63,955 nucleotides of DNA, filler included, from Octopus bimaculoides (GCF_001194135.2; 7 parts of 7 records of this genome joined end to end with filler, not necessarily neighbours in it), one strand, 5' to 3'; numbered from the whole stretch's first letter, positions 1 through 11,616 are shown. Numbers and translations are program-made. Notes: a model not told the origin generated them from the letters alone.

Positions 1-731
1 TATTATCGCTTGTCGTCGTAGTTTTCGTAAAAGTCTCCCACCTGTCATCACCTCTTTCTTCTTCCTCTTATTTTAATCTATTTCTTCAGCAGTATCTACT
101 CTTCTTCTTCTTCTTCTACACCCCCCCCCACGTATTTATAATTTATCCCTTGTTTCATGTCATTTCTTTTCAATCTTTTTATACAGCACCACGTATATCA
201 TCTGTAAATGTTTTACCGAAACAATTCTTCTTCTTCTTCTACTACTTCTTCTTCTTCTTCTTCTTCTTCTACTACTACTATTACTACTACTAATTCTTCT
301 TCTACTTCTTCCTCCTCATCTTCTTTTTCTTCTTCTTCGTCTATTTTTACACACATTCACAATCTTCAACGCCAACATCTTTGTCAATATCACATACATC
401 ANNNNNNNNNNTTCAACACCAACATCTTTGTCAATATCACATACATCATCACAACAAAACCTGTGAATCCTCATCATTTTCACAATGCAAAAAAATTATT
501 ATAAACATCACTCCATCATCAGCATCATAACATCAGCATCAACACTCCCACAGTAATTTCCTCTCCTCTGCCACATCACCATACTCATTACTGCTCCCAT
601 CCTACCCAACATTATCTACAACACCATCATGAATTTTATCATGATGGTAATCTACATTTCGTATCTTCCATCATCCCATTCTTTTGACAAATATGTTCAA
701 TAAATGTTCTTAACTCAATGTTATGTTCCAG

Positions 732-803
732 GAAATTGCACCGAAATGAAATTAAGAAAATCCAAGCAGGAACCTTCCGAAATCTTTCCAGTTTAATAAC
801 TCT
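732..803 (+). CDS. 72-nt LRR exon, type A (A1): KLHRNEIKKIQAGTFRNLSSLITL
   Basis: ttatgttccAG acceptor, exactly 72 nt, GTGAGT donor at 804; open frame fits the typical 24-aa LRR pattern xLxxNxIxxIxxxxFxxLxxLxxL; phase 2 at both ends. Confidence 0.9.
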
Positions 804-1110
804 GTGAGTTGAATCAACCTACTTCTATCGTATTTCTTTGACGATATCTCACTAAATTCGTAATGTCTTTCTATAGAGGCAATCTATAATTTGTGAACGT
901 GATTGTGGGCCCAAATCTGAGATGTGAGATACATGGGAGCAACCAATGCCATTATCCTCATCATCATCATCATCATCAACCTTATCATCATCATCATCAT
1001 CTAACCCATCATCATCATCAGCGTCTGCGTTCCTAAATGTTTTGGTATTACATTTTATATTTCATTACGAACATGTATACAATTTTTCACGGCTCCCTAT
1101 TTTGTTACAG

Positions 1111-1182
1111 AGATTTGTTTGATAATAATATCAGTGAATTAGGAGTTGGATCTTTTCAAAATCTTCCCAATTTAACGACTCT
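1111..1182 (+). CDS. 72-nt LRR exon, type B (B1): DLFDNNISELGVGSFQNLPNLTTL
   Basis: tttgttacAG acceptor, 72 nt, GTAAGT donor at 1183; open LRR frame; phase 2/2. Confidence 0.9.
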
Positions 1183-2056
1183 GTAAGTTGCATAATTTTT
1201 TTGATTGCCTTTTATTCATAATATAATTCTAAACATTTTATGTCTTTCCATGCTTTCTTTTCTGTCATCCACTCTACTTGACGCACTATATACACTCAGT
1301 CGCTTTCCCCAGGAATATTCAATTCTTTGTAAATGTCTGAGAAGGTGTGTGTGTGTGTATGTGTGTGTGCGTGTGCGTGTGTGTGTGAATATTAGTCTCT
1401 TGCTTTATATATGAGTTTCTGATAATTACTGCATATGATTTTGTGCAAGATTGTGCATATGTCAGTGTGTGTCATGCAGGATGAGTGAACGTACATGAGT
1501 GTATCGACTTCATTTGTACCTCCTTTTGTATATTATTTATTATGTTTACATCTCGAGCAACGCTGATTACCATTCATGGCTCTCCGTTCTAATTATAAAT
1601 TGTGAATGATATTATTTGTTTAGATTTTGCTACACTTTTCAACTTTACTCATATATAAATATCTCTAACCTTCCAACTTTTAATCAATCACTTTCTTTAT
1701 GTCTCTGAAAATATTTCCAGCTATATAAATTCTTCATCATCACCTTCATCAAAATCATCATTGCCATATCTTTCCTCATCAACACCATCACAATAAACAC
1801 CACCACCATCGCCATCATCACCACCATTATCATCACCATCATCATGAACATGAACACTAAAACCATTTTCTTCGACCACCGAATTATCATCAGATCCATC
1901 ACCACCATCACAAACACCACAACCACCACCATCAACATCATTATCATCTACGCCATCATCATCATCATCAACTGCTTTCCTAAATTTTAGGCGTTATATT
2001 TTATATTTCATTACGAACCTGTATACATTTTTTCACGGTTCACTTATTTGTTACAG

Positions 2057-2128
2057 AAATTTGTTTGATAATGATATCAGTGAATTAGAAGTTGGATCTT
2101 TTCAAAATCTTCCCAGATTAAAGACTCT
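2057..2128 (+). CDS. 72-nt LRR exon, type B (B2): NLFDNDISELEVGSFQNLPRLKTL
   Basis: atttgttacAG acceptor, 72 nt, GTAAGT donor at 2129; open LRR frame. Confidence 0.9.
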
Positions 2129-2164
2129 GTAAGTTGCATTAGTTTTTTGATTCTCTTTTATTGA

Positions 2165-2190
2165 CCCTAACCCTAACCCTAACCCTAACC
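2165..2190. repeat. Short interstitial telomere-type repeat (CCCTAA)4
   Basis: ccctaaccctaaccctaaccctaacc read directly. Confidence 0.85.
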
Positions 2191-2261
2191 TCAATCTCCT
2201 TGACGCGTTATATACACTCAGTCGCTTTCCACAGGAATATCGCATTCTTTGTGAACGTCTG

Positions 2262-2314
<53 letters not shown>

Positions 2315-2773
2315 TATCAGTGTCTGGGTTTATGTATGAGTTTTGATAACATAGGCATATGATTTTGTGTATGTGCCTATGTCAACCTATGTCTTTCAGT
2401 ATGAGTGAATGTACACGAGTGTATCGACTTGGTTTGTACCTCTTTTGTATATTATTTATTATGTTTACTTTTCGATCAAAGCTGATTACCATTCATGGCT
2501 CCGCGTTATAATTATATATTGTGCATTACATTATTCATGTTTAAAGTTTGCTACACTTTCCAAATCTGAGTAATATATTTTACGCTTTTCTGTTTCTTCA
2601 TCATTTACTCCTAATGACGTAATATTCATCACTGCTCTCATTCCACCCAACATTATCTACAACATCCTCATGAACTTCATCATGATGGTGGTCTACATTC
2701 TATCTTTTCATCATCGAATTCTTTAGTCACAAATTTGTTCAATAAATGTTCTTTACTCAATGTTATGTTCCAG

Positions 2774-2845
2774 GAAATTGTACGATAATAAAATTAAGAA
2801 CATCAAAGCAGGAACTTTCCGAAATCTTTCCAGTTTAACAAGTCT
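2774..2845 (+). CDS. 72-nt LRR exon, type A (A2): KLYDNKIKNIKAGTFRNLSSLTSL
   Basis: ttatgttccAG acceptor, 72 nt, GTAAGT donor at 2846; open LRR frame. Confidence 0.9.
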
Positions 2846-3018
2846 GTAAGTTGAATCAACTTTCGTTTACAATATTTCTTTGACGATATCTTTCTGAGTC
2901 TGTAATGTCCTACAGATGCAATTTATAGTTTGTGAACGTATGTGAATGTGAGTGTGGACCCATTTCTGAGATGTGAGATATATGGGAACATGATAACTGA
3001 GGGGAAACATTTAGTGCA

Positions 3019-3060
<42 letters not shown>

Positions 3061-4547
3061 TACAGATCTGTATAGATGAATTGCTGTGTGTGTATGTATG
3101 TAGATCGAATCTAAATNNNNNNNNNNTAACATCCTTGAATAACGCTAGTAGATGTTATTCCTCGTCTTCTTCTACTTCTTCTTCGTCTTCTCTTTCCCAT
3201 TCTTCTTTTTCCACTTCTCCTCCTTCCTTATCTTTTTGTCTTCTTTTCTTCTCTTCTCCTTTTATCTTCTCTTCTTTTACCAGTCGCTTTTTTAAAAATC
3301 TTTTTGTACTTCACTCCCTATTCGCTCCTATTCCGTTTTTCTGTTCTTCTGCATGACCCCCCTGCGTCTTACTCTTTTGTATGCTCACCTCATTCCTTCT
3401 CTTCTTAATTTGCTACTACAAATTTTCTCTTCTTCTTCACTCCCCCCCTTTTTCTTCTTCTCCTTCTCCCTGTTGTTCTTGTTCGCCCAATAACTATTCT
3501 CCTTCATCATCTACTTCATTTCCTTCTTGTTCGTCTTCTTATTCCTCGTTTTCATCATTTACTTCTTCATATTCTTGTTCTGTCCCCTTTTCTTTTCTCC
3601 TACTTCTTTTTCTTCATTCCCTGCTATTCTTGTACCTCTCCTACATACCCTTTGTATTTGCTTTCCCGCTCTTTCATCATATGTTTGCTTCGTAAATATT
3701 TGTCTTGCGTAAACCATTTTCATCATCGNNNNNNNNNNNNNNNNNNNNNNNNNNNNNNNNNNNNNNNNNNNNNNNNNNNNNNNNNNNNNNNNNNNNNNNN
3801 NNNNNNNNNNNNNNNNNNNNNNNNNNNNNNNNNNNNNNNNNNNNNNNNNNNNNNNNNNNNNNNNNNNNNNNNNNNNNNNNNNNNNNNNNNNNNNNNNNNN
3901 NNNNNNNNNNNNNNNNNNNNNNNNNNNNNNNNNNNNNNNNNNNNNNNNNNNNNNNNNNNNNNNNNNNNNNNNNNNNNNNNNNNNNNNNNNNNNNNNNNNN
4001 NNNNNNNNNNNNNNNNNNNNNNNNNNNNNNNNNNNNNNNNNNNNNNNNNNNNNNNNNNNNNNNNNNNNNNNNNNNNNNNNNNNNNNNNNNNNNNNNNNNN
4101 NNNNNNNNNNNNNNNNNNNNNNNNNNNNNNNNNNNNNNNNNNNNNNNNNNNNNNNNNNNNNNNNNNNNNNNNNNNNNNNNNNNNNNNNNNNNNNNNNNNN
4201 NNNNNNNNNNNNNNNNNNNNNNNNNNNNNNNNNNNNNNNNNNNNNNNNNNNNNNNNNNNNNNNNNNNNNNNNNNNNNNNNNNNNNNNNNNNNNNNNNNNN
4301 NNNNNNNNNNNNNNNNNNNNNNNNNNNNNNNNNNNNNNNNNNNNNNNNNNNNNNNNNNNNNNNNNNNNNNNNNNNNNNNNNNNNNNNNNNNNNNNNNNNN
4401 NNNNNNNNNNNNNNNNNNNNNNNNNNNNNNNNNNNNNNNNNNNNNNNNNNNNNNNNNNNNNNNNNNNNNNNNNNNNNNNNNNNNNNNNNNNNNNNNNNNN
4501 NNNNNNNNNNNNNNNNNNNNNNNNNNNNNNNNNNNNNNNNNNNNNNN

Positions 4548-5520
4548 CGGAAAGTGCATTTTCGATTTTAACAGTTATTTTTTTTCAAAGCTATAAAGGA
4601 AGTGAAAAACGAGCCTATTCGGCATATTTTGGTTTATGAGTTCAATAAAGGCAACAACGCAAATGAAAGTGCAATGAATAATTATGTACTGTATGGGTTT
4701 CGGTCAATACTGCAATTCCGAGTCGGACACTACAGTCTGGAAGACGAGCCTCGTCATGGAAGATCTTTAGAGCTCGACGAGGACGTTCAGCAAAACTGGC
4801 AGAAAAAATATCATCGTATTTATTGGCGAACTAGCAGAGAAGTTTGCATTTGGTCTTTCAACCATTCATTGATATCTGCGTACCATCAGAAAAGTCGGTG
4901 AATTCGGTCAATGGGTTCCTCACAAATATTTCGCGTCTAAGACAACGAATGTTTGTTTTTCTTTGCTATCACGTGTGACGAAAGAAACATTTTACACCAA
5001 ATAGTAACTGGTGAGGAGAAATATATTCTCTGCAACAATATCAAGCGCCAATAACGATGGAATAGGAATAGGAAAAACACCGACATCCCAGGCTAAAGAT
5101 CTTCATCCACATAAGGTGTTACTATTTGTTTGGTGGGACATGAGTTGTCTATTCCACTTTGAAAATTTAAACCCAAACCGATCAATAACAAAGGATATCT
5201 ACTGGGAACAGCTTGAACAGCTCATGTCAGCTCCAAAAGAAAAACAACCATCTTTGTTATTAATTCTAAAGGTGTTCTTCGATCGGTAAAATGCTCGGCG
5301 ACAAAAAGCGAGGATGACATTCACAAGGCTAAACTATTCTGAATGGGAAACGAAGCTTCACACACCATATCTGCCGGACTTTTCCAGATGTGATTTTCAG
5401 TTATTCTGCAGTCTTTAAAATCATTTGGATGGAAAAAATATGACATTTGTAGACAATTTCACAACAGTACTGGAGGAGTATTTTTCGTTACGAACAACTG
5501 AAATATGGAAGAGGGGGCTT
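4548..5520 (+). mobile_element. Decayed mariner (Mos1/SETMAR-like) transposon
   Basis: Frameshifted transposase: IRHILVYEFNKGNNA..SLEDEPRHGR (HTH), VTGEEKYI (cf. VTGDEKW), KVLLFVWWD (cf. KVMLCVWWD), HTPYLPDF (cf. HPPYSPDL); 3' end truncated into a (CAT)n tract. Confidence 0.9.
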
Positions 5521-5809
5521 TGTAAGTCTAGCATCATTTATATCATCATCGTCATCATCATCACCACCACCATCTGCATCATCATCTACATGAACACTAA
5601 CACCATCATCTTCGTCCACCCAATTATCCTCATATCCATCACCAAAATCACAAACATCACAACCAACACCACGACAACCACCACCATCATAATTATCATC
5701 ATCTACACCATCATCATCAGCGTGTACTTTCCTAAATTTTTAGGCATCATCTTTTATATTTCATTACGAACCTGTGTACATTTTTTCACGGCTCACGTTT
5801 TTGTTGCAG

Positions 5810-5881
5810 GGTGTTGTACAATAATGCTATCAATGAATTAGAAGTTGGATCTTTTCAAGATCTTCCCAGTTTAACGACTCT
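5810..5881 (+). CDS. 72-nt LRR exon, type B (B3): VLYNNAINELEVGSFQDLPSLTTL
   Basis: tttttgttgcAG acceptor, 72 nt, GTAAGT donor at 5882; open LRR frame. Confidence 0.9.
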
Positions 5882-6549
5882 GTAAGTTGCATTAATTTTT
5901 GATTCCCTTTTATTCATAATATAATTCTAAACATTTCATGTTTTTCCATGCTTTCTTTTTTCTCTCACTCTCCTTAACGCAATAAATACACTCAGTCGCT
6001 TTCCACAGGAATATGATATTCTTTGTGAATGTCTGAGGTGTGTGTATGGGTGTGTTGTGTGTGTTTGTGTCTGTGTGAATATCAGTGTCTGGATTTATGT
6101 ATGAGTTTCTGATAATTAATGTATATGTTTTTGTGCATGTATCTGCATATGTAAGCCTGTGTCTTTCAATATGAGTGAATGTACACGAGGGTATAGACTT
6201 AATTTGTATATCTTTTTGTATATTATATATTATGTTTACATCTCGTTCAACGCTGATTACCATTCATGGTTCTATGTTGTAATTGTTTATTGTGAATTAC
6301 ATTATACATGCTTAAATGTTGCAACACCTACCAAGTCAGAGTAATTTATTTTACACTTTTCTATGTCTTCATCATCCTAAACACAAAAGATCCGTCTGCA
6401 TAAATAACTTCTTTTCTATTGATCGTTTCCTTTCCTTCTCCTTCTCCTCTTTGTCTTCTACCACTACATCTTCCTCTTTCTTCCTCCACTACGACAGAAA
6501 GAAAGACTGCGACAACTGCAACAGCAGCAAGGAATACTACTACTACTAC

Positions 6550-7250
6550 TTGTAATAATAATAATAATAATAATTTCATTTATTGGCCACAAGTGCCGAC
6601 GTATAGGGGACAACACCGTAGATGGGAACACTGGGGATTTTACGCAAAACAACGAGTAAACAGTTCCGAAAATAATAACAAAACACATGAAACAAGAAAC
6701 ATATTGCAATGAGATTTCCCCAATGGCTGTGATGACTATCCAGGTTTGGCTCAGGTAAACCCTAATCCTGAACAACCCGATGCTTCGATGGTGCACAGAA
6801 AGGGCGCACCTCTCCTCAAATTCACCAGCGTACAGACGCATCATTAGAGTAGGGCTATTTTGTCTACATTCACACATATTTGAGCAACTACATGGAGGGG
6901 AATCACTTCTGTCTCGTTGCTGATGGTTTTTACCGATGCTGGTGTTTGTTGTTTGTTGTCCTCGTCCTGGCGTTGATAGCAGTGGGAAGCCTTCCAACTC
7001 TTGCACTTTCTAGCAGTTGAGGTTAGAATGCTCGCAGATGAGTAGTTTCTCCACAAACAGAACAACGCGGCCTTTCCCCACTCAGTCATTGTGCAATACT
7101 ATCCCGTTTTGGAGAGGGAGGTTGTCCGGGATTGAAGTTTTCGGGACATGATCTGGAGAAGTATTTCTAGTTCCACTCCGGGCCAGTCCTCCCTGAATCT
7201 TTTGTCCCCTATATTTGGACGGTATCTGACCCTTCCACGATTATGTGTAA
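6550..7250 (-). mobile_element. Probable LINE 3' fragment with (ATT)n tail inserted in an LRR intron
   Basis: Complex, more GC-rich block interrupting the duplicated flanks; on the minus strand it ends ..aataaatgaaatt(att)n. Family not identified. Confidence 0.4.
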
Positions 7251-8424
7251 TGATCGAAATTAACAACATCACCCCATCATCAGCATCACAATATCAATAA
7301 CACTCCAACNNNNNNNNNNNNNNNNNNNNNNNNNNNNNNNNNNNNNNNNNNNNNNNNNNNNNNNNNNNNNNNNNNNNNNNNNNNNNNNNNNNNNNNNNNN
7401 NNNNNNNNNNNNNNNNNNNNNNNNNNNNNNNNNNNNNNNNNNNNNNNNNNNNNNNNNNNNNNNNNNNNNNNNNNNNNNNNNNNNNNNNNNNNNNNNNNNN
7501 NNNNNNNNNNNNNNNNNNNNNNNNNNNNNNNNNNNNNNNNNNNNNNNNNNNNNNNNNNNNNNNNNNNNNNNNNNNNNNNNNNNNNNNNNNNNNNNNNNNN
7601 NNNNNNNNNNNNNNNNNNNNNNNNNNNNNNNNNNNNNNNNNNNNNNNNNNNNNNNNNNNNNNNNNNNNNNNNNNNNNNNNNNNNNNNNNNNNNNNNNNNN
7701 NNNNNNNNNNNNNNNNNNNNNNNNNNNNNNNNNNNNNNNNNNNNNNNNNNNNNNNNNNNNNNNNNNNNNNNNNNNNNNNNNNNNNNNNNNNNNNNNNNNN
7801 NNNNNNNNNNNNNNNNNNNNNNNNNNNNNNNNNNNNNNNNNNNNNNNNNNNNNNNNNNNNNNNNNNNNNNNNNNNNNTGAATCAACCCACGTTTATAGTA
7901 TTTCTTTGACGATATCTTTCTAAACCTGTAATGTCTTTCTGTAGACGCAATTTATAGCGTGTCACCTTCATCTCATTTTACATCTGTTTTTGCTTCTTTA
8001 CCTGTCTGTAGTTCTATTTCTTCCTCTTCTCCACCTTGTTCTACTTCTTCTATTTGTTCTTCCCCTCCCCCTGCACCACCGTCTACTTCTTCATCGTGTT
8101 GTACTTTGTGTTCGTCACCTACTGTTCAGCTTCTCCTTCTCCTATTTTTTTCTCCTTCTCGTTGTTATGGTGGCTGTTTTTCTTCCCTCTTCTCGTCTTC
8201 TTCAGCTTCTCTTCCTTCTTTTCCTCCTTCTTCTCCTCCCCTTCATCTATTTCTTCGTCTTCTTTTTCTACTTATTCTTCCTTCTCCACCACTACTACTT
8301 CTTTCCTTGTTTACTTATTCAAATTTTTTCTACATTTCTCTTTTCTTTTCGTATCGTCTTGTACTGCGTCTGCATCTTTTTCATATTATATTTCTACATC
8401 TCCTCCTCCTCCTCCTTCTGTTTC

Positions 8425-8706
8425 CAAAGGTAAATTATTCAGACCCCAAAGAATTCCCCTCAACACATGGCTGTGATGTTCCCTCACTACTTCTGCTCGT
8501 GATCAGAGATGCACATATCGTCAGCCACCAAGGGACGTGCTCAACTGGTTAAGATCAAACAACTGACAAGCAAATATGTGGTATTAAGCAGAATATTTGC
8601 TGTAGTCCATCTTTTTATACCAAGACAAAACAATGTACATGATAACACTTCCAATCAGTTAAGATCAGAAGCCATGAGAGCCACTGCCTGGAACTGAATC
8701 CGGGCA

Positions 8707-8756
<50 letters not shown>

Positions 8757-8759
8757 TAT
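8425..8759 (+). mobile_element. Retroposon 3' end with (ATT)n tail
   Basis: Complex block interrupting the CT-rich flank and ending in an (ATT)n run; resembles a common octopus interspersed repeat. Family uncertain. Confidence 0.5.
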
Positions 8760-9614
8760 NNNNNNNNNNNNNNNNNNNNNNNNNNNNNNNNNNNNNNNNN
8801 NNNNNNNNNNNNNNNNNNNNNNNNNNNNNNNNNNNNNNNNNNNNNNNNNNNNNNNNNNNNNNNNNNNNNNNNNNNNNNNNNNNNNNNNNNNNNNNNNNNN
8901 NNNNNNNNNNNNNNNNNNNNNNNNNNNNNNNNNNNNNNNNNNNNNNNNNNNNNNNNNNNNNNNNNNNNNNNNNNNNNNNNNNNNNNNNNNNNNNNNNNNN
9001 NNNNNNNNNNNNNNNNNNNNNNNNNNNNNNNNNNNNNNNNNNNNNNNNNNNNNNNNNNNNNNNNNNNNNNNNNNNNNNNNNNNNNNNNNNNNNNNNNNNN
9101 NNNNNNNNNNNNNNNNNNNNNNNNNNNNNNNNNNNNNNNNNNNNNNNNNNNNNNNNNNNNNNNNNNNNNNNNNNNNNNNNNNNNNNNNNNNNNNNNNNNN
9201 NNNNNNNNNNNNNNNNNNNNNNNNNNNNNNNNNNNNNNNNNNNNNNNNNNNNNNNNNNNNNNNNNNNNNNNNNNNNNNNNNNNNNNNNNNNNNNNNNNNN
9301 NNNNNNNNNNNNNNNNNNNNNNNNNNNNNNNNNNNNNNNNNNNNNNNNNNNNNNNNNNNNNNNNNNNNNNNNNNNNNNNNNNNNNNNNNNNNNNNNNNNN
9401 NNNNNNNNNNNNNNNNNNNNNNNNNNNNNNNNNNNNNNNNNNNNNNNNNNNNNNNNNNNNNNNNNNNNNNNNNNNNNNNNNNNNNNNNNNNNNNNNNNNN
9501 NNNNNNNNNNNNNNNNNNNNNNNNNNNNNNNNNNNNNNNNNNNNNNNNNNNNNNNNNNNNNNNNNNNNNNNNNNNNNNNNNNNNNNNNNNNNNNNNNNNN
9601 NNNNNNNNNNNNNN

Positions 9615-9673
9615 AATAAAATTAAGAACGTCAAAGCAGGAACTTTCCGAAATCTTTCCAGTTTAACAACTCT
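9615..9673 (+). CDS. Type A LRR exon (A4), 5' end lost in gap: ..NKIKNVKAGTFRNLSSLTTL
   Basis: 59 nt visible after the N-gap, near-identical to A2, GTAAGT donor at 9674; a 72-nt exon would start at 9602 inside the gap. Confidence 0.85.
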
Positions 9674-9862
9674 GTAAGTTGAATCAACCCACGTTTATCG
9701 TATTTCTTTGACGATATCTTTCTACCATCATCATGATGATCATCTGCCCCGTCATCATCACCACCATCAGCGTCTACTTTCCAAACTTTTTAGGTATCAT
9801 ATCTTATATTTCATTACGAACCTGTATACAATTTTTCACTGTTCATTTTTTTTTTGTTACAG

Positions 9863-9934
9863 AGAGTTGTACAATAATGATATCAATGAATTGGAAGTTG
9901 GATCTTTTCAAAATCTTCCCAGTTTAACGGCTCT
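9863..9934 (+). CDS. 72-nt LRR exon, type B (B4): ELYNNDINELEVGSFQNLPSLTAL
   Basis: tttttttgttacAG acceptor, 72 nt, GTAAGT donor at 9935; the peptide is visible at the end of ORF 9708..9938. Confidence 0.9.
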
Positions 9935-10318
9935 GTAAGTTGCATTAGTTTCTTTATTCCATTTTGTTAACAATATAATTCTGGACATTCAATGGCTTCC
10001 CTTTCGAATCCTCATCTTTTTCACAATGATCAAAATTAACTTCATCCCATCATCAGCATCATAACATCATCATCACCACTCCCCAATAATATCTTNNNNN
10101 NNNNNCATCATAACATCATCATCACCACTCCCGCAATAATATCTTCTCCTCTGCCTCATCATCATCATTCTCAGCACAGCTCCCACCCTACTCAACATTA
10201 TCTACAACATCATCATGAAGTTCATATTGATGGTAATCTACTTTTCATATCATCCCTCATCTAATTCTTTATTCATAAATTTGTTCCATAATTTGTTCGA
10301 CTCAATGTTATGTTCCAG

Positions 10319-10390
10319 GAATTTGTACAATAACAAAATTGCGAAAATCAAAGCAGAAACCTTCGGAAATCTTTCCAGTTTAACAAATCT
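10319..10390 (+). CDS. 72-nt LRR exon, type A (A5): NLYNNKIAKIKAETFGNLSSLTNL
   Basis: ttatgttccAG acceptor, 72 nt, GTAAGT donor at 10391; open LRR frame. Confidence 0.9.
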
Positions 10391-11489
10391 GTAAGTTCAA
10401 TCAACCCACGTTTATAGTATTTCTTTGACGATATCTTTCTAAACCTGTAATGTCTTTCTATAGACGCAATTTTTAGCGTGTCACCTTCATCTCATTTTAA
10501 ATCTGTTTTTGCTTCTTTACCTGTCTATAGTTCTATTTTTTCCTCTTCTCCACCTTGTTCTACTTCTTCTATTTGTTCTTCCCCTCCTCCTCCACCACCG
10601 TCTACTTCTTCATCGTTTTTGCATCGTGTTGTACTTCGGATTCGTCACCTACTGTTCAGCTTCTCCTTCTCCTTCTACTTTTTTCTCATTCTCGTTGTTA
10701 TGGTGGTTGTACTTCTTCTCCCTTCTCTTCTTCTTCAGCTTCTCTTCTTTCTTTTCCTCCTTCTTCTCCTCCTCTTCATCTATTTCTTCTTTTTCTACTT
10801 ATTCTTCCTTCTCCACCACTACTACTTCTTTCCTNNNNNNNNNNNNNNNNNNNNNNNNNNNNNNNNNNNNNNNNNNNNNNNNNNNNNNNNNNNNNNNNNN
10901 NNNNNNNNNNNNNNNNNNNNNNNNNNNNNNNNNNTGTACCTCTCCTACATACCCTTTGTATTTGCTTTCCCGCTCTTTCATCATGTGTTTGCTTCGTAAA
11001 TATTTGTCTTGCGTAAACCATTTTCATCATCGTCTTCTTCATTCAGCACAGCCAACGTCTGCGAGACCAAGCGCTTCTTCTTCGTCATCAAACTTTCATC
11101 CGGATCGTTATGATAATTATTATCATCACCACAATTATCATCATTAATATATTTATTACTGGCAACACCGTTATATCGTTATTAACTGTAATTACATCTT
11201 CCACCTCCTCCTCTACCTTGTCATCATATCAACTATCGTCACCACCACCACCATCATCATCAACATCACCATCATTACCAGTAATATCAGCAGCAGCAGC
11301 AGCAGCAGCAGCAGCGGCGGCATCACCATCATCATCGTCACCGTTTTCTTCCTTATCATAATCGTCATTTTATTTCCTTCTCCACACACATCTACTGATT
11401 TCGCTATAATATTTAATATTTATTTCGAAACCCACTTCTTTTGGATCTTCTCATAAATAATTCAGCTTTTTCAATTCATTGAACTAAAA

Positions 11490-11616
11490 GTCAGAGTGGG
11501 ATGAGATAAATTACCTGCATCACCTTGTTAAAAAAAACAGGTAATAATTTTACACTGCACTTATTCTTAGTGCAAGTTTCGGAAAGTGCATTTTCGATTT
11601 TAACAGTTATTTTTTT
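11490..11616 (+). mobile_element. 5' part of a second copy of the 4548 mariner
   Basis: cggaaagtgcattttcgattttaacagttattttttt is identical to 4548-4584; cut by gap; left boundary approximate. Confidence 0.75.

What the first reader, a model, noticed from the sequence alone, without database searches (positions are those of the whole stretch)
732..10390. Cassette differences are mostly amino-acid changing and spare the LRR scaffold
Hand codon comparison: B1 vs B2 has 5 amino-acid changes and 0 silent. B3 vs B4 has 4 and 2 (one silent change is the junction Leu base). A1 vs A2 has 7 and 1. A2 vs A5 has 7 and 2. Scaffold L, N, first I, F and the later L positions are invariant. The residue after the junction Leu (K,D,N,K,V,E,N), the pair before Asn (HR,FD,FD,YD,YN,YN,YN), the residue after Asn (E,N,D,K,A,K,D,K) and the last two x positions vary most. 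Established: these positions of LxxLxLxxNx form the concave ligand-binding face. Inference: diversifying selection on binding specificity. Counts are small and gene conversion could distort them.
Basis: partly seen in the sequence, partly recalled or inferred. Interest (0 to 1): 0.7.

Follow-up and report, generated by a model that had tools for sequence, protein, structure and literature searches.

The report
Recently duplicated one-LRR exons, fast-evolving binding face
This is a stretch of an animal (probably cephalopod) gene in which each 24-residue leucine-rich repeat is its own 72-base exon; the exons were copied recently, and the surface-exposed binding-face residues have changed about twice as fast as the neighbouring introns, a known pattern for LRR receptors that rests here on very few sites.

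Summary
The window holds seven complete 72-nt exons, one exon cut by a gap, and one lost in a gap. All lie on the + strand, have AG/GTRAGT splice sites, and sit in intron phase 2 (Leu codon split CT|G). They fall into two types, A and B, each with its own conserved flanking intron.

The ratio of 23 amino-acid-changing to 5 silent differences matches the neutral expectation of about 3.5:1 (P=0.39), and whole-exon dN/dS is about 1.

The suggested exon-versus-intron test does give a signal:
- **Scaffold codons:** omega ≈ 0.08.
- **Other x codons:** omega ≈ 0.66.
- **Six concave-face codons (x2, x3, x5, x7, x8, x10):** omega ≈ 2.3-2.7 relative to introns. LRT P ≈ 0.0002-0.004; 0 of 600 null simulations reached it; site resampling gave P ≈ 0.001-0.005.

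Caveats: only 12 codon positions in 8 exons carry the signal, introns give a star-like tree while exons do not, there are signs of mosaicism or gene conversion, and the assembly is gapped.

The "cassettes" are ordinary spliced exons of the LGR/gonadotropin-receptor and brown-alga ROCO kind (72 bp, phase 2), not VLR-type cassettes. This is a new member of a known kind and of moderate interest.

The parts
732..803 (+). LRR exon A1 (72 nt, phase 2-2): (L)KLHRNEIKKIQAGTFRNLSSLIT
   Evidence: AG|72 nt|GTGAGT, open in the LRR frame. The concatenated exons match Pfam LRR_8 at E=5e-48.
1111..1182 (+). LRR exon B1: (L)DLFDNNISELGVGSFQNLPNLTT
   Evidence: The intron from A1 is 307 nt.
2057..2128 (+). 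LRR exon B2: (L)NLFDNDISELEVGSFQNLPRLKT
   Evidence: The B unit, exon plus about 700 nt of intron, is 79-81% identical among B1, B2 and B3.
2774..2845 (+). LRR exon A2: (L)KLYDNKIKNIKAGTFRNLSSLTS
   Evidence: The A unit is 80-82% identical among A1, A2 and A5, flanks included.
5810..5881 (+). LRR exon B3: (L)VLYNNAINELEVGSFQDLPSLTT
7310..7877 (+). Assembly gap that very probably hides an A-type exon (A3)
   Evidence: 7249-7309 matches the sequence found about 210-270 nt upstream of A exons (488-549, 10022-10083). 7878 onward starts at position +7 of the A-type 3' intron (TGAATCAACCC...), and over 94 aligned bases differs from the A5 3' intron at 3 positions (about 97% identical).
9615..9673 (+). 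LRR exon A4, 3' 59 nt only (5' 13 nt lost in gap 8760-9614): ...NKIKNVKAGTFRNLSSLTT
   Evidence: It is followed by GTAAGT. The intron to B4 is 189 nt.
9863..9934 (+). LRR exon B4: (L)ELYNNDINELEVGSFQNLPSLTA
10319..10390 (+). LRR exon A5: (L)NLYNNKIAKIKAETFGNLSSLTN
   Evidence: This is the most diverged A exon; it carries G17->E and R->G.
831..849 (+). Invariant intron block TATTTCTTTGACGATATCT, 28 nt downstream of every A exon (also at 2873-2891, 7899-7917, 9701-9719, 10418-10436)
   Evidence: Invariant in all five copies in alignment A1. It is probably a splicing element. A hairpin is predicted in one copy, but the stem sequence is not kept in the other copies.
1055..1090 (+). Near-invariant intron block TTATATTTCATTACGAAC...TTTTTCAC, 20-55 nt upstream of every B exon (probable branch-point region)
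   Evidence: Invariant columns in alignment A2.

Best explanation
The window is an internal part of one + strand gene of a eukaryote, probably a cephalopod mollusc.

Shown:
- Each 24-residue 'typical' leucine-rich repeat (LxxLxLxxNxIxxIxxGxFxxLxx) is a separate 72-nt exon.
- All introns are in phase 2 and split the same Leu codon. Any run of these exons therefore splices in frame into an LRR solenoid.
- There are two exon types, A and B, and each travels with its own flanking intron. The array therefore grew by recent tandem duplication of exon-plus-intron units, with intron divergence of about 0.15-0.2 per site.
- Since then, fold-determining residues have been held by purifying selection (omega about 0.08). 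The other x positions, mostly on the convex side and loops, are mildly constrained (about 0.66). There have been no indels or stop codons, and all splice sites are intact.
- The six solvent-exposed positions of the beta-strand and ascending loop have changed about 2.3-2.7 times faster than the introns.

Inferred:
- This excess reflects selection for different residues in different repeats. That means diversification, or maintained diversity, of a ligand-binding concave surface, as in other LRR receptors.

Not shown:
- That the exons are expressed, what the rest of the protein is, or what it binds.
For: Anatomy:
- Eight exons with canonical splice signals and one shared phase.
- LRR_8 at E=5e-48.
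- The best solved-structure matches are the LGR5, LGR4, LRIG1, LRRC15 and IGFALS ectodomains (E down to 1e-62).
- The same 72-bp, phase-2 layout is documented for gonadotropin receptors and brown-alga ROCO genes (PMC11378527).

Duplication of units including introns.

Functional constraint:
- Omega_scaffold is 0.08, P=2e-5.
- There are 0 gap events in exons against 22 in the aligned introns.

Excess at the concave face:
- Joint codon-plus-intron ML gives omega 2.26-2.65, LRT P 0.001-0.004.
- The fixed-intron-tree version gives 2.3-2.5 under three base-frequency schemes, and 2.5-2.7 under all nine topology pairs.
- 0 of 600 null simulations reached the observed value.
- Pooled pairwise concave dN is 0.43, against intron 0.21 and dS 0.115.
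- Codon positions 1+2 of concave codons have p=0.36-0.39 against intron 0.15-0.20, resampling P=0.04 (A), 0.017 (B) and 0.001-0.002 combined.
- The 5' half of the exon is a local divergence peak between better-conserved intron flanks.
Against: - Only 12 codon positions in 8 short sequences carry the signal.
- A window-mask comparison using all intron, including microsatellite stretches, is not significant. Parsimony event counts give only 1.3-1.5 times the intron rate.
- Close pairs (B1/B2, B3/B4, A2/A5, A2/A4) have concave pN of about the intron distance. The excess sits in between-subtype comparisons.
- The B introns (the only family with four copies aligned) give a star tree (informative sites 3:4:4) while the B exons give 5:0:0. 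A4 is mosaic (Fisher P=0.03). The shared-genealogy assumption of the ML test is therefore violated to some degree.
- Several changes are adjacent multi-nucleotide differences, which inflate codon-model tests.
- No spliced product or close homologue was found among 5.8 billion proteins (best 41% identity), so expression is unproven.
- The assembly is gapped, and the order of its pieces is not verified.
Confidence: 0.55

Rival explanations
1. Concerted evolution without adaptive change. Unequal crossing-over and gene conversion keep homogenising the units, introns and synonymous sites included, so the introns understate the true age of the repeats. The concave-face codons are simply unconstrained, or their old differences are protected from homogenisation. 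Their divergence then only looks faster than neutral.
For: - The B introns (the only family with four copies aligned) give a star-like tree (3:4:4) while the B exons carry a clear 12|34 split.
- A4 is mosaic: its exon is nearest A2 and its intron nearest A5, P=0.03.
- Identity between the A2 and A5 segments jumps from about 80% to 99% along the same duplicated stretch.
- Exon dS (0.115) is lower than intron d (0.21).
- Close pairs show concave pN of about the intron distance.
Against: - Homogenisation alone cannot make concave sites more divergent than introns unless selection opposes it at those sites, and that is itself selection for repeat diversity.
- The excess is robust to topology, base frequencies and the choice of intron subset.
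- Intron divergence is fairly uniform over about 700 nt.
Confidence: 0.25
2. Templated micro-conversion. Short patches copied from other, more divergent LRR exons (A to B, or other LRR genes) import clusters of differences into exons only. Because donors share the scaffold, only the x positions change.
For: - All five 12|34 informative sites of the B exons lie within about 24 nt at the exon's 5' end.
- B3 and B4 carry TTGTACAATAA, identical to A5 over 11 nt, and the same codons TAC, GAT and AAT recur at x7 and x8 in both families.
- There are several adjacent double and triple differences: CGA/GAT, TTT/TAC, GAT/GTG, AAT/GCT.
Against: - The shared codons are equally well explained as ancestral states of the common A/B ancestor.
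- x10, x2 and x3 show no sharing between families.
- A and B exons are only about 63-68% identical, which is poor substrate for conversion.
Confidence: 0.08
3. Alternative-splicing repertoire. Because every exon is 72 nt and phase 2-2, subsets of the array are skipped or chosen, giving isoforms with different LRR content. Alternative transcripts with different combinations of LRR exons are reported for brown-alga ROCO genes, and the effect would be Dscam-like. This is compatible with the main explanation rather than exclusive of it.
For: - All exons are symmetric and interchangeable in frame.
- Invariant intron blocks lie next to the exons.
- Precedent: PMC11378527.
Against: - There are no transcript data.
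- Introns are 189-874 nt or more, so there is no steric exclusion.
- No significant intron RNA structure or docking-type pairing was found (z = -0.23 and +0.71).
- All 5' splice sites are near-perfect GTAAGT, which is typical of constitutive exons.
Confidence: 0.1
4. Dead or artefactual array: decaying pseudo-exons, or copies created by misassembly of a repeat-rich region.
For: - Whole-exon omega is about 0.8-1.
- A5 has G17->E.
- No protein matching the spliced exons is found in databases.
- The piece holds seven N-runs, two of them unmerged overlaps.
Against: - Omega_scaffold is 0.08.
- There are no stop codons or indels in 8 exons, while the introns have 22 gap events.
- All 15 visible splice junctions are intact.
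- The copies differ by 8-19%, far above allelic or assembly-error levels.
Confidence: 0.04
5. VLR-like germline donor cassettes used for somatic assembly of an antigen receptor.
Against: - Every module has a full acceptor and donor splice site and a constant phase.
- VLR cassettes are unspliced, often partial modules copied into an incomplete gene (own knowledge).
- The likely host is a mollusc (weak evidence).
Confidence: 0.01

Closest known systems
Glycoprotein-hormone receptor / LGR4-6 type ectodomain genes (one LRR per ~72-bp exon, all introns phase 2)
   Same: The exon size, the phase-2 split of a Leu/Ile codon and the 'typical' 24-residue LRR consensus are the same. LGR5 and LGR4 are the best solved-structure sequence matches (E=1e-62 and 1e-42). 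The phase-2 organisation of gonadotropin receptors is cited in PMC11378527.
   Different: - The match is at repeat level and occurs in several registers, so it is not evidence of orthology.
- No LRRNT, LRRCT, hinge or 7TM exon is in the window.
- Here the exons, with their introns, are recent duplicates (about 80% identical including introns). In LGR genes the repeats are ancient (own knowledge).
Brown-alga (Ectocarpus, Saccharina) ROCO LRR exon arrays
   Same: They have 72-bp, phase-2, one-LRR exons, exon duplication and shuffling, and diversifying selection reported at x positions on the concave face (PMC3341825; PMC11378527).
   Different: - The kingdom and the LRR context differ: ROCO proteins are cytoplasmic LRR-ROC-COR GTPases.
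- No ROC-COR is seen here.
- This array shows two alternating exon types with long, microsatellite- and transposon-laden introns.
Tetrahymena 90-bp LRR exon arrays
   Same: They are tandem arrays of equal-length LRR exons separated by phase-2 introns, with a 'junction' amino acid, and they expanded clonally with their introns (PMC6564038).
   Different: The exons are 90 bp rather than 72 bp, the host is a ciliate, and the authors report mostly purifying selection by Ka/Ks.
Lamprey/hagfish VLR cassettes
   Same: They are 24-residue LRR modules with variability focused on concave beta-strand positions (own knowledge; mentioned in PMC3341825).
   Different: VLR cassettes are not spliced exons; they are copied somatically into an incomplete gene. 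Here every module is a canonical exon.
Dscam-type tandem alternative exon clusters
   Same: They are tandemly duplicated exons whose copies differ mainly at binding-surface residues (own knowledge; PMC11378527).
   Different: No docking or selector RNA pairing was found. Joint inclusion of the exons is in frame and structurally sensible for a solenoid, so nothing enforces mutual exclusion.

Membership tests
Typical-type LRR domain (Pfam LRR_8 / LxxLxLxxNxIxxIxxxxFxxLxx, 24 residues) | Sequence match to the LRR profile, with conserved L, N, I and F scaffold at a 24-residue period | tested here: met
   LRR_8 at E=5.2e-48 and LRR_4 at E=2e-29 on the concatenated exons. The scaffold is invariant in 8 exons.
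One-LRR-per-exon, phase-2 exon arrays (LGR/gonadotropin-receptor-like; brown-alga ROCO-like) | Each repeat is one exon of 72 nt bounded by AG...GT | tested here: met
   There are 7 complete exons of exactly 72 nt with AG and GTRAGT, and the eighth is cut by a gap.
One-LRR-per-exon, phase-2 exon arrays (LGR/gonadotropin-receptor-like; brown-alga ROCO-like) | All introns are in the same phase (2), splitting a Leu/Ile codon | tested here: met
   CT|G or CT|A junction codon in every exon.
One-LRR-per-exon, phase-2 exon arrays (LGR/gonadotropin-receptor-like; brown-alga ROCO-like) | Exons are actually spliced together in a transcript | not testable with these tools
   No transcript data are available. 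No protein matching the spliced product was found among 5.8 billion sequences (best 41% identity).
LGR4/5/6 receptor | LRRNT cap, about 17 LRRs, hinge and 7TM rhodopsin-type domain in the same gene | not testable with these tools
   The window holds only internal LRR exons. Similarity to LGR5 is at repeat level in several registers.
ROCO (LRR-ROC-COR) | ROC GTPase and COR domains downstream of the LRRs | not testable with these tools
   Nothing but LRR exons and a mariner remnant is found in the window.
VLR germline cassettes | Modules lack splice sites and flank an incomplete germline receptor gene; they are assembled by somatic copy-choice | tested here: not met
   Every module has a canonical acceptor and donor site.
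Dscam-like mutually exclusive exon cluster | A mechanism enforcing one-of-many choice (docking/selector RNA pairing, steric hindrance, or frame incompatibility) | tested here: not met
   The exons are frame-compatible, the introns are 189 nt or longer, and the intron folds are no better than shuffles (z = -0.23 and +0.71). Only two introns were folded, so long-range pairing is not excluded.
Positively selected LRR binding surface (as in VLR, plant R genes, ROCO) | Non-synonymous rate at concave-face x positions exceeds the neutral rate | tested here: inconclusive
   Omega is 2.3-2.7 against introns, with P of about 0.0002-0.004 by LRT, 0 of 600 null simulations, and resampling P of 0.001-0.005. 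However, this rests on 12 codon positions, the window-mask test is not significant, and exon and intron genealogies conflict.

The most novel reading that the evidence does not exclude
A cephalopod LRR receptor gene carries a recently amplified array of interchangeable, phase-compatible one-LRR exons that are under diversifying selection. The array is used combinatorially, by exon skipping or choice, or through rapid germline exon turnover, to produce a diversified recognition repertoire. This would be an animal counterpart of the brown-alga ROCO system, with a Dscam-like effect, in a lineage that has no adaptive immunity.
Probability: 0.1. Interest if true: 0.75.

Novelty: new member of a known kind. 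Interest (0 to 1): 0.35.

Why it matters
If the signal holds up in the full gene and its paralogues, it would show an invertebrate, probably a cephalopod, extending and re-tuning an LRR binding surface by duplicating single-repeat exons. Selection would be focused on the ligand-facing residues. Plants, jawless fish, brown algae and ciliates arrived at the same evolutionary route independently. That would mark the gene as a candidate recognition receptor, for immune or cell-cell recognition, worth expression and binding studies.

As it stands, this is a small, well-behaved example of a known pattern. Its practical value is methodological. Counting replacement against silent differences says nothing here, because the counts match the neutral expectation. 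The intron comparison is what carries the evidence.

Tried and rejected
- **Whole-exon Nei-Gojobori dN/dS.** About 1, and uninformative with roughly 15 synonymous sites.
- **Parsimony change counts per site class against all intron, and a sliding 'mask' over intron windows.** The concave excess was only 1.3-1.5 times and not significant. These tests include third positions and microsatellite intron that aligns badly, so I kept them as a caution rather than a refutation.
- **Protein database search with the spliced exons.** No close relative, best 41% identity, so no extra paralogues and no evidence of expression.
- **Two metagenome DNA scans with invariant exon strings.** Zero hits.
- **Structure prediction of the spliced product.** Mapping of sites to the concave face therefore rests on the LRR consensus and the gapless alignment to LGR5.
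- **Folding of the A1-B1 and A4-B4 introns to look for docking or selector-type structure.** Not better than shuffles. A small hairpin is predicted in one A-downstream block, but its stem sequence is not kept in the other copies.
- **Search for further LRR exons on both strands.** None beyond the eight.
- **Literature search for the Slit exon structure.** Unproductive.
- **VLR-cassette and Dscam-type readings.** Rejected on the splice sites and frame compatibility.
- **Host identification.** The only hint is a 53%-identical Octopus bimaculoides protein matching the mariner remnant, which is weak.

Full report
**What is there**

The piece (1-11616) is eukaryotic DNA. Its GC content is about 35%, and it is full of (CAT)n, (CTT)n and (GT)n microsatellites. 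It also holds a short telomere-like (CCCTAA)4 run and a degenerate mariner transposon.

A scan for AG + 72 nt + GTRAG that is open in the LRR frame finds exactly seven exons, all on the + strand:
- A1 732-803
- B1 1111-1182
- B2 2057-2128
- A2 2774-2845
- B3 5810-5881
- B4 9863-9934
- A5 10319-10390

An eighth exon, A4 at 9615-9673, lacks its first 13 nt because gap 8760-9614 cuts it. A ninth, A3, almost certainly lies inside gap 7310-7877. The sequence before that gap matches the region upstream of A exons, and the sequence after it starts at position +7 of the A-type 3' intron. Motif scans of all six frames find no other LRR exon.

Each exon begins with the third base of a Leu codon whose first two bases (CT) end the previous exon. 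All introns are therefore phase 2, and any run of these exons is in frame. The concatenated product is a strong LRR_8 match (E=5e-48).

Its best matches among solved structures are the ectodomains of LGR5 (1e-62), LRIG1, LRRC15, IGFALS, LGR4 and TLR13/TLR3. These matches occur in several registers, so they show repeat-level similarity and not orthology.

**Gaps**

No compared exon spans a gap, and reading-frame continuity is set by splicing, not by the gaps. Gap 3117-3126 is intronic. Gap 3729-4547 lies in the long A2-B3 intron. Gap 7310-7877 hides A3, and gap 8760-9614 removes the 5' end of A4. Gap 10096-10105, like 402-411, is an unmerged contig overlap: 37-40 nt are repeated on both sides with one difference. 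The order of the scaffold pieces cannot be verified here.

**How the array arose**

A exons and B exons each carry their own flanking intron sequence. A units are 80-82% identical over about 370-390 nt, and B units are 79-82% identical over about 700-840 nt. The repeats are therefore tandem duplicates of exon-plus-intron units.

Whole-exon divergence (8-19%; 3% for the partial A2/A4 pair) is no greater than intron divergence (15-25%). A and B units are themselves distantly related, at about 62-68%.

**Check of the observation**

However, 23 replacement against 5 silent differences is what neutrality predicts for 56 non-synonymous and 16 synonymous sites (P=0.39). Pairwise dN/dS runs from 0.5 to 2.3 on about 15 synonymous sites. 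'Mostly amino-acid changing' is therefore not evidence of selection.

The spatial pattern is real:
- Scaffold positions vary in 1 of 16 family-by-position cells.
- Other x positions vary in 9 of 20.
- The six positions x2, x3, x5, x7, x8 and x10 vary in 12 of 12 (Fisher P=0.0016 against the other x positions).

**Test of the interpretation**

It is a codon model (MG94 x HKY) whose mutation process and branch lengths are tied to the flanking introns, with three a-priori site classes.

- **Joint fit.** Omega_concave is 2.26-2.65, omega_other 0.67-0.79 and omega_scaffold 0.08-0.10. The LRT of omega_concave=1 gives P=0.004 with a wide intron set and 0.001 with a near intron set. Three classes against one class gives P=2e-6.
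- **Branch lengths fixed from introns.** Omega_concave is 2.3-2.5 under intron, uniform or exon base frequencies, with or without x10. It is 2.5-2.7 under all nine topology combinations. Each family alone gives 2.8 (A, P=0.012) and 2.1 (B, P=0.028).
- **Parametric bootstrap under omega=1.** None of 600 replicates reached 2.36; the 99th percentile was about 1.9-2.0.
- **Tree-free summaries.** Pooled concave dN is 0.43, intron d 0.21, exon dS 0.115, other-x dN 0.14 and scaffold dN 0.015. First and second positions of concave codons have pairwise p of 0.36-0.39 against 0.15-0.20 in introns, with site-resampling P of 0.04 (A), 0.017 (B) and 0.001-0.002 combined.
- **Position along the unit.** The 5' half of the exon is a local peak of divergence between better-conserved intron flanks.

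**Reasons for caution**

- The signal comes from 12 codon positions.
- Parsimony event counts give only 1.3-1.5 times the intron rate.
- A mask slid over all intron windows, including microsatellite stretches that align badly, reaches the observed count in 12-34% of windows.
- Close pairs (B1/B2, B3/B4, A2/A5, A2/A4) have concave pN about equal to the intron distance. The excess sits in the between-subtype pairs.
- The B introns (the only family with four copies aligned) give a star tree (informative patterns 3:4:4), while the B exons give 5:0:0, and all five sites fall within about 24 nt.
- A4's exon is nearest A2, but its 3' intron is nearest A5 (P=0.03).
- The duplicated A2 and A5 segments jump from about 80% to 99% identity along their length.
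- Synonymous sites are slower than introns.

Together these points mean that gene conversion or unequal crossing-over has probably acted. The shared-genealogy assumption is therefore imperfect. Several differences are also adjacent multi-nucleotide changes, which are known to inflate codon tests (own knowledge). Homogenisation alone, however, does not make concave sites more divergent than introns unless selection resists it at those sites.

**Is the array alive?**

It appears to be. The scaffold omega is 0.08. There are no stops or indels in eight exons, against 22 gap-open events in the aligned introns. All visible splice sites are intact.

Expression is unproven. No protein in the 5.8-billion-sequence collection matches the spliced product; the best hit has 41% identity.

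**Comparison with known systems**

The 72-bp, phase-2, one-LRR-per-exon layout is the one known from gonadotropin and LGR receptor genes and from brown-alga ROCO genes (PMC11378527). In the ROCO genes, diversifying selection on concave-face sites, exon shuffling and alternative splicing have been reported (PMC3341825).

Tetrahymena has analogous 90-bp arrays with phase-2 introns and a 'junction' residue (PMC6564038).

The modules are not VLR-type cassettes, because they have splice sites. Nothing enforces Dscam-type mutual exclusion: the exons are frame-compatible and the two folded introns show no significant structure.

The host is probably a cephalopod. The only database relative of the mariner remnant is an Octopus bimaculoides protein, at 53% identity over 29% of the query. 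This is weak evidence.

**Verdict**

The inference of diversifying selection at the concave face is partly supported by the exon-versus-intron test. Gene conversion is the main unresolved rival.

This is a new member of a known kind and of moderate interest.

Noticed in passing
window 4548-5520 and 11579-11616: There is a degenerate, internally deleted mariner element in the A2-B3 intron. It matches Pfam HTH_48 and Transposase_1, with frameshifts and stops. The same element's first 37 nt recur at the very end of the piece, after A5.
   Followed up: partly
window 3631-3728 vs 10935-11032; 7880-8307 vs 10399-10834: There is a higher-order duplication with a period of about 7.5 kb. The distal long intron after A2 and after A5 is 99% identical over 98 nt, while the exons and proximal flanks of A2 and A5 are only about 80-86% identical. 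The A3 and A5 downstream introns are 91-96% identical. This could be mosaic conversion, a very recent segmental duplication, or an assembly artefact.
   Followed up: partly
window 402-411 and 10096-10105: Both 10-N gaps have 37-40 nt repeated on either side with a single difference. They are unmerged overlapping contig ends, so the true sequence is continuous and about 40-50 nt shorter.
   Followed up: yes
window 2165-2190: A telomere-like (CCCTAA)4 run replaces part of the otherwise conserved intron downstream of B2.
   Followed up: no
window 831-849 (and 2873-2891, 7899-7917, 9701-9719, 10418-10436); 1055-1090 and its B2-B4 copies: These intron blocks are invariant in all copies, and so are more conserved than the exons they flank. 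The first is TATTTCTTTGACGATATCT, 28 nt after every A exon. The second is TTATATTTCATTACGAAC...TTTTTCAC, 20-55 nt before every B exon. They are probably splicing signals such as the branch-point region or an enhancer. No supporting RNA structure was found.
   Followed up: partly
all exon 3' ends, e.g. window 802-809: In this phase the donor site CT|GTAAGT reads CTG TAA, so retention of any of these introns would terminate translation immediately after the repeat.
   Followed up: no
exons as listed, vs flanking introns: Synonymous divergence in the exons (pooled dS 0.115) is about half the intron divergence (0.21). The Poisson P is 0.02-0.06. This could reflect constraint on synonymous sites in these tiny exons, or preferential homogenisation of exons.
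   Followed up: partly
window 6590-7260 and 8440-8700: These are unique, non-repetitive intron stretches. The first has a 180-aa ORF on the minus strand and the second a 62-aa ORF; neither ORF has a Pfam match. They may be fragments of unclassified transposable elements.
   Followed up: no
whole piece, + strand: There is strong strand asymmetry, with GC skew down to -0.55. The coding strand's introns are rich in C/T microsatellites such as (CTT)n and (CAT)n. They give long spurious Ser/Leu/Ile-rich ORFs that are not genes.
   Followed up: no
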